Shown one piece after another: positions 28,507-31,500 of a DNA stretch of 64,000 nt. Each line of letters begins with the position of its first letter. The stretch's first letter is position 1. A program made the position numbers and the translations under genes. Source of the stretch: Guillardia theta CCMP2712 (Eukaryota; Protista; Cryptophyta). The notes under the pieces were generated by a model. That model worked only from the letters and a program-made list of their open reading frames with translations, made no database searches and had not been told where the DNA came from. Location of the stretch: positions 145,115 to 209,114 of the forward strand of contig NW_005434651.1 in the NCBI RefSeq assembly GCF_000315625.1, given 5' to 3'.

Positions 28507-31500
28507 CTAAGAATCAGACGAAGAGATCAGCCGTGTTCGTAGATCCCTCAGAACCCTGTGCAATCTCTCACGGTGCAACGTTGCCTCCAACTCGCTCAGA
28601 GTTTCTTGCCTTATGTCCATCTGAAACAAATGGCTCTGGCACGCCGAGGACAACTTGGCTCTCCCTGCAGCACTCAAGCGTGTTCCCCTCCCAATCTCAG
28701 TCTCATTTCTTTCAGCCAGATCCCGGTGCCACATGGAGATGATATCCCTCCGAGGAGTCGTCAACAATGTTTTCTTGTAGTTGCCAAACTGTCTTGAAGT
28801 TGCAGTCCCTGTTAATTCCATCTTTCTGCGGTGGGCAAGCAAATCCATCTGTCGATAGTAGATAGAGTTCTCGATCTCATGGCGAGCTTGATCGACTTTC
28901 TCCATCACTTGTTCGGCAGCTCCACATGTCTGCATTTCCTTGCAGACAGGACAAGTGTCAAACTGTCTTCGATTCGAGGCTCTCAACTCTGATTTCGCTT
29001 TCTTGACAATCTTTCCTGATCTGCGCCAAAGCTGAGTGTAGCTATCTACACCGATGGCGCGGAGTCCTCTTTGGGTGATGAAGCCATTCTTGTCCACCTC
29101 GCTCGATTCTACGGCACTTCCATCTGGCATGCGCAGTTTGAACGCGAGGCATCGCAGAGCACGAAGTTCCGATTGCCCTGCCAGTGCAGCAAAGTCGTCT
29201 CGAGCTCGCGGAACCCTCCAGTTCTTGTCTGGATCATCCTGCTCCTGCTCCTCCTCCTCGGCTGACCAGCTCTCTTCTGATACAGAAGAATCCAAAGGCA
29301 TCCGAAAGTCTTCTTCATTTTCTTCTGGTTCAACAACATCTACCATCCTTCCATCGCGCCATGCGTTGCACCGATTCTTCCTTTCTGTTCCTTTGCCATA
29401 CAAATGCAACATGCAGGGCTGGAAATTTCTCAGATCCTGTGCCATCTCATTGCAAACTGTCATGAAAGCTAACCAATAGTTGCCATGATCTTCACTCAGC
29501 AATTCATAGAATCTTAAAGAAAACTTTCGACTGACACTCTGCCTTACGATACCATGCCAACAAACCACTACTTTCACTCCAACTGAACGCAGAGCGTAAC
29601 CAGTGGACAGGGTAGAGCACGCGTTCAGGAAGATACATTCGATCTTTTGCAGAACACTAGCTCGTGCATGAAGTTGGATCAGATTCGACAGATGTTGTGC
29701 TGTGACCTGGTTCTCTTGCTGCTTTCGTCCTGTTTCGGAATACCAATACAACCCTCCTGACGAGTCACTACCATGACCTGAAAAATGGCAGCGCCTACAG
29801 GACCTTGCGCAGCAGGTTTCTACTGTACAAGCGGAGCAGCAGATCCCAACGCCAGCATGTGCGACCCCCACAAACTTGTGCTTCTTGAAGAAAGCAGCGC
29901 GGAAGAGATCTTTGAACTCCTGGCATTCCCTCTCCGGATCAATGTCTGTTCCACAGCGACAGGAAAAGAAGACAACTCTAAAGCAAGTAAGATTCTCTTT
30001 CAAGCTGACGGGTCTCGTTAAAGTGGAGATCAGCTCACAAGGAACAACATTCGGACATTCGCAGATCATCTTCAAAACTCGAAGCATATCACTTGCATCG
30101 TGAAACCTTCCATTTCGGTCTTTGCTGAGCGCCTTGACGAGAACTTTCGCAAGAGCATGCCTACCCAAGGTATATTTCTCTTTTCGCTTGTCCTTGCACA
30201 GTAGTTGTGGTAGTTCTCGGATCTTGATGCATTCGATCAGTTTCAGACTATTCTCTGCTTCGAATGGTCTCTTCCCGCTCACCATCTCGTACAGAACGAT
30301 CCCGCAAGACCACACGTCTGATCGCTGATCAACTTCGTTCTCTCCCCCTCCCATCGCAATCTCTGGCGACGCGTAGGCCAAAGTTCCTTTCAAAAAGTCG
30401 CCGCTGGTAATCGATTGATCATCCAATCCATACCTCTTGGAGACACCGAGGTCCACAACGACAGCACTTCCGTCAATGTCTCTTATCATGATGTTTGCAG
30501 GCTTGATGTCTCGATGAACGATGGGGTAGGGTTTGATGGCATGGAGTACAGACAAGCCTGCAAGTACATCACACATGACGTGGCAAGCTTTCAGGTTGTC
30601 GCCTATCAGGTCTGAAGTGGATTCTTGTCCGTTGGCTATTTCTCTATCCAACTTTTGCCGCAGAGACTCTCCCTCGACATAGTCCATGACCAATCCAAGG
30701 AATCTTTGTCGTTTGATATCCTCAAACTCTTGCAAGACATCTACAACATGCACCACGTTGGGATGATCACCAGCTATTTGACTAAGGTTGTCATACTCCC
30801 TCTTCGAATTCAGTCCCGCTTTGACGATTTTGATTACCACCAAACTCTTGTTGAACTGCTCTGCAAGCCATATACTGCCCTGCATTCCCTTTCCCAACCT
30901 CTTCCGGATCAGATATCCAGGTATCTGTGGTACCGGATCAGAAACAGCCTCCAAATCATGCGGGGCTTGACTGGTGTCTTGTTGGCTATGATTGCTTTCC
31001 TCGCCAATGTCAGCCTGATAGGTGAAAGGATTCGAGGGAACAGGTAGTTGAGGCTTTTGAAGATTCGAGAATCTCACAGCAGGAAGATCGCATCTTCGCA
31101 GAGTTCTCCTTGTAGGCAAGAGATCTCTGCTCTCCACTGTCTTGCCGTCGCTCAGGGTGACACGTCGGACCCTCTGTACATCTTGCAACAACTTTCTGTC
31201 GCTCAAGTCTTCTCCGCATGGAATCATTGCCACAAGGTGCAAACCAGGTTGTCTCCTTTCTGCTGCCTCAATAGATTGGTTGACGTAGCGAAAGAGCGGC
31301 CATTCTGTGGCTGCCATAGAACAAGCGTCAACCAAGTCTACCCAGCTTACCACCGTCATGATCGATTCCATAGCTGAGCCGCTCGAAGACTGCAACTTAG
31401 CCATCCGGACTACAAGAGTCTCGTCCACGAATTCAGATTCCTCACATCGCAGAACCATTCCCTCTGCTGATTGTCCAAGAACTTCAACAGAGATGTGCTC

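What the first reader, a model, noticed from the sequence alone, without database searches (positions are those of the whole stretch)
29400..29990. CHAT/caspase-like protease with both catalytic His and Cys motifs downstream of the kinase
Seen: HFSGHG (29770-29787) and CIFLNACST (29611-29637), followed by GVKVVVCW and SRKFSLRFYELL. Established: these match the CHAT consensus hHFsGHG...hhLnAC.S...Gv..Vig.....A..F...FY..L. Inference: an active protease rather than a scaffold.
Basis: partly seen in the sequence, partly recalled or inferred. Interest (0 to 1): 0.8.

Follow-up and report, generated by a model that had tools for sequence, protein, structure and literature searches.

The report
Algal ROCO kinase with CHAT protease
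The alga Guillardia theta has one giant LRRK2-like signalling protein that ends in a genuine caspase-like (CHAT) protease domain with both catalytic residues, an undescribed sensor-to-protease design; the published genome sequence just before the catalytic histidine looks locally wrong.

Summary
HFSGHG (29770-29787) and CIFLNACST (29611-29637) lie in one 2,492-codon ORF (28507-35985, minus strand) of Guillardia theta, with the domain order LRR, Roc, COR, kinase, then this domain.

The domain's own Pfam CHAT match is below threshold (E 0.023). Membership is still solid:
- Four paralogues and many protist relatives pass the Pfam cut-off.
- An 83-sequence family profile hits the solved SAVED-CHAT protease (8TL0) at E 2.5e-28.
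- The AlphaFold model superposes on 8TL0 at Z 21.9, with caspases near Z 13.
- H2071 and C2123 align with its proven dyad, H375 and C422.

"Active protease" is plausible but untested.

New caveat: 80-87 bases just upstream of the histidine (29786-29872) are 98-99% identical to an unrelated cysteine-rich tandem-repeat gene, in antisense. They replace a helix and strand conserved in all 16 closest relatives. Contigs from three other public runs carry 89 different letters there, so the reference is probably locally wrong. I could not recover the true letters.

A conserved helical tail of unknown fold follows the domain.

ROCO-CHAT fusions recur in uncultured protists and I found no paper describing them. 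This scan had already noted other CHAT fusions elsewhere in this genome.

The parts
28507..35985 (-). Single ORF of 2,492 codons (GUITHDRAFT_106084 of Guillardia theta CCMP2712): LRR, Roc, COR, kinase, CHAT-like domain, helical tail
   Evidence: ORF list. Pfam domains. 100% identical to the NCBI protein P0001 over residues 1975-2240. P0001 starts at M61 and has a different last 30 residues. Contigs from other runs are collinear from 28346 to 30800 except at the patch.
34066..35688 (-). Leucine-rich repeat region (about residues 100-640)
   Evidence: Pfam LRR_8 7.1e-26, LRR_14 3.1e-19, LRR_4 5.8e-14
33577..33978 (-). Roc GTPase domain (residues 670-803). P-loop GEPKAGKS, DAGG and THAD motifs read by eye.
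   Evidence: Pfam Roc 1.4e-12, 48.3 bits against cut-off 27; Ras 6.1e-08
31738..32169 (-). COR-A domain (residues 1273-1416)
   Evidence: Pfam COR-A 5.1e-12, 46.3 bits against cut-off 35.3
30103..30909 (-). Protein kinase domain (residues 1693-1961). HRDIKPAN and DLG motifs present by eye.
   Evidence: Pfam Pkinase 1.8e-35
29338..29994 (-). CHAT-type caspase-fold domain (about residues 1998-2216)
   Evidence: Pfam CHAT E 0.023 alone. Family profile against 8TL0 SAVED-CHAT E 2.5e-28. AF2 pLDDT 87.5. Foldseek E 1.5e-10. VIA Z 21.9, rmsd 2.2 A over 189 residues.
29773..29775 (-). Codon of the predicted catalytic His (H2071, second His of HFSGHG)
   Evidence: At least 90% conserved in 83 relatives (H77 of alignment A2). 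Aligns with H375 of SAVED-CHAT.
29617..29619 (-). Codon of the predicted catalytic Cys (C2123 of LNAC)
   Evidence: At least 90% conserved (C129 of A2). Aligns with C422 of SAVED-CHAT.
29786..29872 (-). Foreign 87-base patch inside the CHAT domain, taken in antisense from a Cys-rich tandem-repeat gene. Probably a local error or unexpressed variant of the reference.
   Evidence: 98-99% identical to copies in G000:C398 and C44, with sharp ends. Replaces the motif conserved in 16 relatives. Contigs of runs X1, X2 and X4 carry 89 other letters in place of 29789-29868.
28510..29238 (-). Conserved, mostly helical C-terminal module (residues 2250-2492) after an acidic linker. It begins with the NWR-x-P...AALAGQ-x-E motif.
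   Evidence: Found after the CHAT domain in about 25 of the 150 best relatives. AF2 pLDDT 89.3. No convincing fold match. No Pfam family.

Best explanation
Window 29338-29994 encodes a real CHAT-type (caspase-hemoglobinase fold, clan CD) cysteine-protease domain with an intact His/Cys dyad (H2071, C2123). It is the C-terminal effector of a single-chain ROCO protein: LRR, Roc GTPase, COR, Ser/Thr kinase, CHAT, helical tail. The most likely working model has three steps. The LRRs bind a ligand or partner. The Roc-COR GTPase switch, perhaps with the kinase, changes the oligomeric state of the protein. Bringing CHAT domains together then switches on proteolysis of a specific substrate, possibly the protein's own acidic linker and tail. 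This would be an innate-immunity or cell-death type switch. Shown here: the gene, the domain order, homology and fold of the CHAT domain, conservation of the dyad, recurrence of ROCO-CHAT fusions, and transcript-like contigs. Inferred: catalytic activity, activation by proximity, and the biological role. The 28 residues before HFSGHG in the reference are most likely not the true sequence. The true gene probably carries 30 codons encoding the family's conserved helix and strand.
For: Domain order from Pfam.

Four paralogous domains in the genome share the H-x-[SA]-G-H-G and E-C-x-x-L-N-A-C motifs. All five sequences touch Pfam CHAT, best E 5.8e-13.

An exhaustive profile search found 6,004 relatives, 59 of them at E 1e-30 or better. 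The closest are 38-40% identical over about 490 residues.

The 83-sequence profile hits 8TL0 SAVED-CHAT at E 2.5e-28 over nearly the whole domain. The AF2 model has pLDDT 87.5 and pTM 0.87. Foldseek gives 8TL0 at E 1.5e-10, then caspases. VIA gives Z 21.9 to 8TL0, DdvA 14.8, and caspases, legumains, metacaspases and Csx29 near 13.

H2071 and C2123 align with H375 and C422. Mutating those residues kills SAVED-CHAT, and that enzyme is activated by oligomerisation.

ROCO-CHAT fusions recur: P0103 has the same LRR-Roc-COR-kinase-CHAT order, and P0018, P0006, P0041, P0047, P0081 and P0118 combine COR-A with a CHAT domain above the Pfam cut-off.

Contigs of three runs cover the gene at 100% identity and end near the ORF ends, like an unspliced mRNA.
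Against: No biochemical data exist for any member of this eukaryotic family.

The window's own sequence is below Pfam's CHAT cut-off (14.6 against 24 bits).

In the reference, the strand leading into the His loop is replaced by foreign sequence. I could not read the 89 alternative letters, so intactness of the true gene is inferred from their length (in frame, +9 bases) and from relatives.

The AF2 model in the patch region is carried by the alignment, not by the sequence (pLDDT 78-80 there).

The kind of runs X1, X2 and X4 (RNA or DNA) is the tool's guess, and raw RNA reads of X21 barely cover the gene.

The activation mechanism is by analogy only. The one docking test (CHAT against tail) gave no verdict.
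Confidence: 0.6

Rival explanations
1. The domain is a catalytically silent CHAT-fold module. It would serve as a scaffold or dimerisation surface that regulates the ROCO kinase, rather than as a protease.
For: Caspase-fold pseudo-enzymes are common (established knowledge, for example c-FLIP, which appears among the structural matches). No activity has been shown for this eukaryotic family. Earlier scan notes describe a second CHAT domain lacking its Cys in another G. theta gene (unchecked).
Against: His, the flanking Gly residues, Asn and Cys are at least 90% conserved across 83 diverged relatives at 20-47% identity. That conservation is hard to explain without catalysis. The residues align exactly with the proven dyad of SAVED-CHAT.
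Confidence: 0.2
2. The reference sequence is right. In the sequenced genome a fragment of the Cys-rich repeat gene really replaced about 27 codons of the CHAT core (a templated repair patch). This copy's protease domain would then be damaged, and the other runs see another allele or copy.
For: The patch is in the public assembly and in the NCBI protein. It is in frame and the 2,492-codon ORF stays open. Short shared bases at both junctions (3 and up to 4 bases) fit microhomology-mediated repair as well as an artefact.
Against: Contigs of three runs from 2011, 2014 and 2018 match the gene perfectly on both sides, with no other difference over 2.4 kb. All carry the same-sized 89-letter alternative. 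No second copy of the gene exists in the assembly. The run flagged as possible DNA source holds the same 0.98 share of words as the others, the share expected if the two junctions are missing (weak evidence).
Confidence: 0.12
3. The two motifs are a chance resemblance and the region is just a linker after the kinase.
For: Pfam alone gives only E 0.023 for CHAT and 0.12 for Peptidase_C14.
Against: Paralogues, 6,004 relatives, the profile hit to a solved CHAT domain at 2.5e-28, a confident model and Z 21.9.
Confidence: 0.01

Closest known systems
SAVED-CHAT of Haliangium ochraceum (PDB 8TL0; type III-B CRISPR/CBASS protease cascade)
   Same: It is the best sequence-profile match (E 2.5e-28) and the best structural match (Z 21.9, rmsd 2.2 A over 189 residues). 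It has the same HFxGHG and VLNAC motifs, and its dyad H375/C422 aligns with H2071/C2123. It is a sensor domain fused to a C-terminal CHAT domain that is switched on by oligomerisation.
   Different: It is bacterial. Its sensor is a SAVED domain that binds cyclic tri-AMP, whereas here the upstream modules are LRR, Roc-COR GTPase and a kinase. Identity is only about 20%. Its substrate (PCaspase) has no known counterpart here. The helical tail is absent from SAVED-CHAT.
TPR-CHAT / Csx29 (Craspase, type III-E CRISPR) and the CHAT anti-sigma factor DdvA (8RW5)
   Same: Same CHAT fold (Z 12.9-14.8). Both are proteases held inactive until a partner changes conformation.
   Different: They are clearly more distant than SAVED-CHAT. 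They are regulated by a CRISPR effector complex or by membrane signalling, and have no GTPase or kinase.
ROCO proteins (human LRRK1/LRRK2, Dictyostelium Roco kinases, Chlorobium tepidum Roco, brown-algal LRR-ROCOs)
   Same: LRR, Roc, COR and kinase in the LRRK2 order, all above Pfam cut-offs. Roc-COR is a dimerisation-linked GTPase switch (titles and abstracts listed). LRR-ROCOs of brown algae are proposed immune receptors (PMC11378527).
   Different: In the ROCO literature I could search, no ROCO is described with a caspase-like domain. No paper in the library holds both 'CHAT domain' and 'ROCO'. The brown-algal ROCO paper mentions no protease. LRRK2 ends in a WD40 domain instead (established knowledge).
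Bacterial NTPase-centred conflict systems with caspase-like effectors (Kaur et al. 2020, PMC7159879)
   Same: The logic is the same: an NTP-dependent switch coupled to death-type effectors. That paper notes rare Roc-type 'AP-GTPase' plus COR modules in such systems in cyanobacteria and verrucomicrobia.
   Different: Those are multi-gene bacterial systems built around vWA proteins. Here everything is one eukaryotic polypeptide that also includes a kinase.
Caspases, metacaspases, legumain (clan CD)
   Same: Same fold and the same order of His then Cys (Z about 13).
   Different: Pfam Peptidase_C14 gives only E 0.12. Identity is 8-13%. This domain is much closer to CHAT, so it is not a caspase or metacaspase family member.

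Membership tests
CHAT domain (Pfam PF12770) | Significant sequence-profile relationship to bona fide CHAT domains | tested here: met
   The family profile of 83 relatives, with the window's domain as first row, hits the solved SAVED-CHAT at E 2.5e-28 over profile positions 18-199 of 207. Paralogues and relatives score 25-47 bits against Pfam CHAT, cut-off 24. The window's domain is 38-40% identical to relatives P0021 and P0034.
CHAT domain (Pfam PF12770) | The window's own sequence passes Pfam's curated cut-off | tested here: inconclusive
   14.6 bits and E 0.023 against cut-off 24. Only profile positions 141-251 align. The part of the profile before the His falls on the foreign 87-base patch, which must lower the score. 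This is an operational threshold, not a defining property.
CHAT domain (Pfam PF12770) | Caspase-hemoglobinase fold, closest to solved CHAT domains | tested here: met
   AF2 pLDDT 87.5. Foldseek top five rows are all 8TL0 chains. VIA Z 21.9 to 8TL0, with DdvA next at 14.8.
CHAT domain (Pfam PF12770) | His then Cys catalytic dyad at the ends of adjacent strands | tested here: met
   H2071 follows model strand 71-75 and C2123 follows strand 123-127. Both are at least 90% conserved. They align with H375 and C422 of SAVED-CHAT. The His-Cys distance itself could not be measured.
CHAT domain (Pfam PF12770) | Cysteine-dependent peptidase activity | not testable with these tools
   Needs expression of the domain and a C2123A control.
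ROCO proteins | Roc GTPase directly followed by a COR domain in one chain | tested here: met
   Roc 48.3 bits (cut-off 27) at residues 670-784 and COR-A 46.3 bits (cut-off 35.3) at 1273-1416. The Roc-to-COR spacer is unusually long (about 470 residues) and holds two Cys-rich repeats. COR-B was not tested.
LRRK-type ROCO kinases | LRR before Roc-COR and a protein kinase after it | tested here: met
   LRR_8 7.1e-26 and Pkinase 1.8e-35 in that order. Orthology to animal LRRK was not tested.
Caspase/metacaspase (Peptidase_C14) | Profile match to Peptidase_C14 | tested here: not met
   E 0.12 and 12.5 bits against cut-off 21.4. Only 2 of 5 paralogues touch it, best E 3.9e-4. Structural Z is about 13, far below the CHAT match.
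Separase (C50) | Closest structural or sequence relative is separase | tested here: inconclusive
   No separase appears among the 50 best rows of either structure search or in the PDB sequence search. Families not listed are not excluded by those tools.

The most novel reading that the evidence does not exclude
Cryptophytes and other protists may use ROCO GTPase-kinases as one-protein death or immunity switches. In this reading, ligand binding by the LRRs and the Roc-COR cycle assemble CHAT protease domains. These then cut the acidic linker and release the family-specific helical tail, or another target, as the executioner. This would be a eukaryotic, GTPase-driven counterpart of the apoptosome and of bacterial SAVED-CHAT or Craspase. 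It would also link the LRRK2 family to caspase-like proteolysis.
Probability: 0.2. Interest if true: 0.85.

Novelty: new variant of a known kind. Interest (0 to 1): 0.6.

Why it matters
ROCO proteins (the LRRK2 family) are studied intensely, yet their outputs are known only as kinase or scaffold signalling. CHAT proteases have been characterised only in bacterial immune systems.

A conserved fusion of the two, recurring in many uncultured protists, gives a directly testable hypothesis: a Roc-COR GTPase switch can drive a caspase-like protease. It also adds a candidate innate-immunity or cell-death receptor class to algae, where such machinery is almost unknown.

Practically, the work flags a probable local error in the G. 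theta reference and its NCBI protein, exactly in the catalytic core. Anyone who synthesises the gene from the database entry would probably get a dead enzyme.

Tried and rejected
1. The 87-base patch as an unannotated intron. No GT...AG pair around it keeps the frame: the candidates are 94, 77, 88, 71, 73, 56 and 49 bases long. The best acceptor, the CAG ending at 29778, would remove the conserved HFSG. I read this. The contigs replace the segment rather than skip it. Rejected.

2. The patch or its donor as a tRNA-like or other structured RNA. Rfam found nothing in the donor repeat. The donor proved to be an open reading frame on the other strand.

3. Recovering the 89 alternative letters.
- Word searches with a 1,300-residue piece and with the domain alone found nothing.
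- The whole-protein search found only the reference protein, alone in its cluster.
- Read laying does not print inserts longer than 40 letters, and its single call was used.

4. Docking of the CHAT domain against the helical tail (complex prediction). Score 0.00, no verdict. This is neither support nor evidence against binding.

5. Fold of the tail. Foldseek against PDB gave nothing at E 0.001 or better. The wide VIA search gave a best Z of 7.3, in the noise range for helical proteins. The ESM Atlas gave TM 0.41 or less.

6. Pfam on the donor repeat protein found no family. NCBIfam on the C-terminal region found none. Tandem Repeats Finder missed the 1,341-base unit because its longest period is 500.

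7. One call used the wrong reading frame and one exceeded the size limit. Both were corrected and repeated.
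Full report
**What is at the coordinates**

The window is a piece of the Guillardia theta CCMP2712 nuclear genome. The protein it encodes is 100% identical over the searched part to NCBI's hypothetical protein GUITHDRAFT_106084.

- HFSGHG is encoded by 29787-29770.
- CIFLNACST is encoded by 29637-29611.
- GVKVVVCW and SRKFSLRFYELL follow, exactly as reported.

In ORF numbering the candidate catalytic residues are H2071 (codon 29773-29775) and C2123 (codon 29617-29619).

**The protein around it**

Pfam finds the following, in order and all well above cut-off:
- leucine-rich repeats, about residues 100-640
- a Roc GTPase, 670-803
- COR-A, 1273-1416
- a protein kinase, 1693-1961

This is the LRRK2-type ROCO layout. 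Nothing in Pfam or NCBIfam passes threshold after the kinase. The 241 residues around the motifs give only sub-threshold hits. CHAT scores E 0.023 (14.6 bits, cut-off 24), aligned to the dyad region of the profile. Peptidase_C14 scores E 0.12.

**Is it a CHAT domain?**

Taken alone the Pfam result would be inconclusive, so I looked for relatives.

Within the genome:
- The same genome holds four clearly related domains, with E values from 7.9e-17 to 3.7e-9.
- They sit at the C-termini of other long ORFs. One is a C-type lectin, kinase and CHAT protein.
- All share H-x-[SA]-G-H-G and E-C-x-x-L-N-A-C.
- All five sequences touch Pfam CHAT, the best at 5.8e-13.
- A later profile search finds at least 23 loci of this family in the genome.

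Beyond the genome:
- An exhaustive profile search of 1.84 billion representative proteins found 6,004 relatives at E 0.001 or better, 59 of them at 1e-30 or better.
- The closest, P0021 and P0034, are 38-40% identical to the window over about 490 residues. That stretch includes everything downstream of the domain.
- In an alignment of 83 domains, the two His, the flanking Gly, and the Asn and Cys of LNAC are at least 90% conserved.

Against solved structures:
- The 83-sequence profile hits one solved structure, 8TL0 chain A, at E 2.5e-28 over nearly its whole length.
- 8TL0 is the activated SAVED-CHAT filament of Haliangium ochraceum.
- An AlphaFold2 model of the window's domain is confident (pLDDT 87.5, pTM 0.87).
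- Foldseek returns five 8TL0 chains first (E 1.5e-10), then CED-3, caspases-7, -9 and -11, and MALT1.
- VIA-align gives Z 21.9 (rmsd 2.2 A, 189 residues) to 8TL0. The CHAT anti-sigma factor DdvA follows at 14.8. Gingipain, caspases, metacaspases, legumains and Csx29 lie between 12.8 and 14.4.

The dyad:
- In the HMM alignment the family's GHG His and LNAC Cys fall on chain residues 355 and 402.
- With the constant offset of 20 these are H375 and C422.
- Mutating those two residues abolishes SAVED-CHAT activity, and they sit about 4 A apart in the active filament.

So the fold, the family and the dyad are established as far as computation can go. Activity is not.

**An unexpected flaw just upstream of the histidine**

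A protein search of the genome threw up six odd 30-residue hits at 90% identity. At DNA level, window 29786-29872 (87 bases) is 98-99% identical to a sequence repeated every 1,341 bases on contig C398, and present on C44 as well. The ends of the similarity are sharp and there is none outside them.

The donor is the coding strand of a huge cysteine-rich tandem-repeat ORF with CPxGxYC-type repeats. It stays open across all 3,051 bases that I fetched. The fragment lies in the ROCO gene in antisense, where it happens to read through as 28 codons (VGVAHAG...SCRRC).

All 16 closest relatives have something else there. They carry a conserved [YH]-P-[RK]-P-E-x-x-x-F-x-x-E-L helix and the hydrophobic strand that leads into HFSGHG. 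The patch is therefore foreign to the family and replaces a core helix and strand.

I then laid public runs on 28300-30800.
- Contigs from three runs of different studies (2011, 2014, 2018) match the window without any other base difference. One contig has a single-base gap at low depth.
- At 29788 to 29869 all three carry 89 other letters in place of the reference's 80. That is a net gain of 9 bases, so the frame is kept.
- The repeat fragment sits on a separate 1,046-base contig of much higher depth.
- Thirty codons is about the length relatives have at this spot.

The most economical reading is that the public assembly, and the NCBI protein derived from it, are locally wrong. The alternative is that they show a variant that is not the expressed one. 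The tool does not print inserts over 40 letters, and I could not find the alternative protein in the sequence collections. The true residues are therefore unknown to me.

The AF2 model threads the patch onto the family fold at pLDDT 78-80. That reflects the alignment, not the patch sequence.

**Transcript and gene model**

The 7,708-base contig of run X1 ends 161 bases after the stop codon. If it is collinear throughout, it begins 59 bases before the first ATG. Its length equals the genomic span plus exactly the 9 extra bases.

This looks like one unspliced mRNA, although the tool only guesses that the run is RNA. It supports the full ORF rather than the annotated model. The annotated model starts at M61 and swaps the last 16 residues for 30 others.

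**What follows the domain**

After an acidic linker comes a conserved module of about 240 residues, 28510-29238. It starts with NWR-x-P...AALAGQ-x-E...LGF.
- It follows the CHAT domain in about 25 of the 150 best relatives, sometimes in two copies.
- It is confidently predicted as a helical bundle ending in a long coiled helix (pLDDT 89.3).
- It has no Pfam family and no convincing structural relative.
- A docking test of CHAT against the tail gave no verdict.

**Relatives and their architectures**

The nearest relatives come from unnamed metagenome or metatranscriptome contigs of 4-7 kb.
- P0103 has the same LRR, Roc, COR, kinase and CHAT-like order, plus a MIB_HERC2 domain.
- P0018, P0006, P0041, P0047, P0081 and P0118 combine COR-A (with Roc or SPRY in some) with a CHAT domain that passes Pfam's cut-off.
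- Others join the domain to kinases, a RING finger or a TIR domain.

The domain is thus a mobile C-terminal effector, and its fusion to ROCO modules is recurrent rather than a one-off.

**How it most likely works**

Shown: a sensor-type repeat, a GTPase switch, a kinase and a dyad-bearing CHAT domain sit in one chain, conserved across relatives.

From the literature:
- CHAT proteases are latent and are switched on by assembly or a conformational change. SAVED-CHAT is activated by cA3-induced filament formation, and TPR-CHAT by target RNA binding to the CRISPR complex (titles).
- Roc-COR modules cycle between monomer and dimer with the nucleotide state (titles and abstracts).
- Roc-type GTPases with COR occur, rarely, in bacterial NTPase-driven conflict systems.
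- LRR-ROCOs are proposed immune receptors in brown algae.

Inferred: ligand binding and the GTPase cycle bring CHAT domains together and activate cleavage of a specific target, possibly the protein's own linker and tail. The biological role would be defence or regulated cell death. My estimates are about 0.95 that it is a true CHAT-fold domain, about 0.6 that it is an active protease, and about 0.3 that this mechanism holds.

**Known or new**

The held library contains no paper that mentions 'CHAT domain' together with ROCO or with Guillardia theta. The ROCO and CHAT papers I opened do not describe such a fusion. That library lacks most subscription journals, so this is absence in what I could search, not proof.

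This scan had already noted other CHAT fusions on other DNA of this genome: lectin-kinase-CHAT, membrane-anchored CHAT and CHAT-helicase. It also holds a first-reader note on this same ORF. Those notes are leads only. I independently saw the lectin-kinase-CHAT paralogue and the size of the family.

I class the finding as a new variant of a known kind: a known protease family in an undescribed architecture with an unnamed accessory module.

Noticed in passing
L010 1-3051 (+), which is G000:C398:6864-9914; also C44 around 84.7-87.5 kb: This is the donor of the patch. It is a tandem array with a 1,341-base (447-codon) unit that is one continuous open frame across the whole 3-kb locus. It encodes cysteine-rich CPxGxYC-type repeats. 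No Pfam or Rfam match was found. Its contig has 5-20 times the depth of the ROCO gene in the runs laid.
   Followed up: partly
window 35805-35985 and 28507-28557 (-): The annotated protein P0001 starts at M61 of the ORF and replaces the last 16 residues by 30 others, presumably through a predicted 3' intron. Contigs are collinear through the stop codon. The longest would start 59 bases upstream of the first ATG. By eye, the extra 60 N-terminal residues hold a 19-residue hydrophobic stretch flanked by Arg/Lys. A weak IQ motif lies just after M61, at residues 69-84 (E 0.5).
   Followed up: partly
window about 32581-32904 (-), ORF residues about 1028-1135: Two tandem Cys-rich repeats of about 50 residues lie in the unusually long Roc-to-COR spacer. 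Their pattern is CP-x-GH...C-x-x-C...C-x-x-C-x-W-DLC-x-x-C, which looks like ZZ-type zinc fingers. Pfam reported nothing there at E 1 or better.
   Followed up: no
window 28510-29238 (-): A conserved helical module follows the CHAT domain in about 25 relatives, sometimes duplicated. It has no Pfam family and no recognisable fold relative.
   Followed up: yes
window 25700-28060, both strands: This is a GC-rich stretch (0.59-0.62 against 0.46-0.50 inside the ROCO gene). It has long overlapping open frames on both strands that encode Ser/Arg/Glu/Gly-rich low-complexity sequence. It may be a neighbouring gene or repeat-rich spacer.
   Followed up: no
relatives P0031, P0006, P0021, P0103 (unnamed metagenome or metatranscriptome contigs): The same CHAT subfamily is fused to TIR_2 (P0031), to SPRY plus COR-A with two CHAT copies (P0006), to a RING finger (P0021), and to MIB_HERC2 within a full ROCO kinase (P0103). 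This domain mix is typical of immune or death signalling.
   Followed up: partly
G000, 23 loci listed (for example six on contig C118 between 116 and 168 kb): The genome holds at least 23 loci matching this CHAT-like family profile. They include a cluster of six on one contig, which suggests a tandemly expanded repertoire.
   Followed up: no
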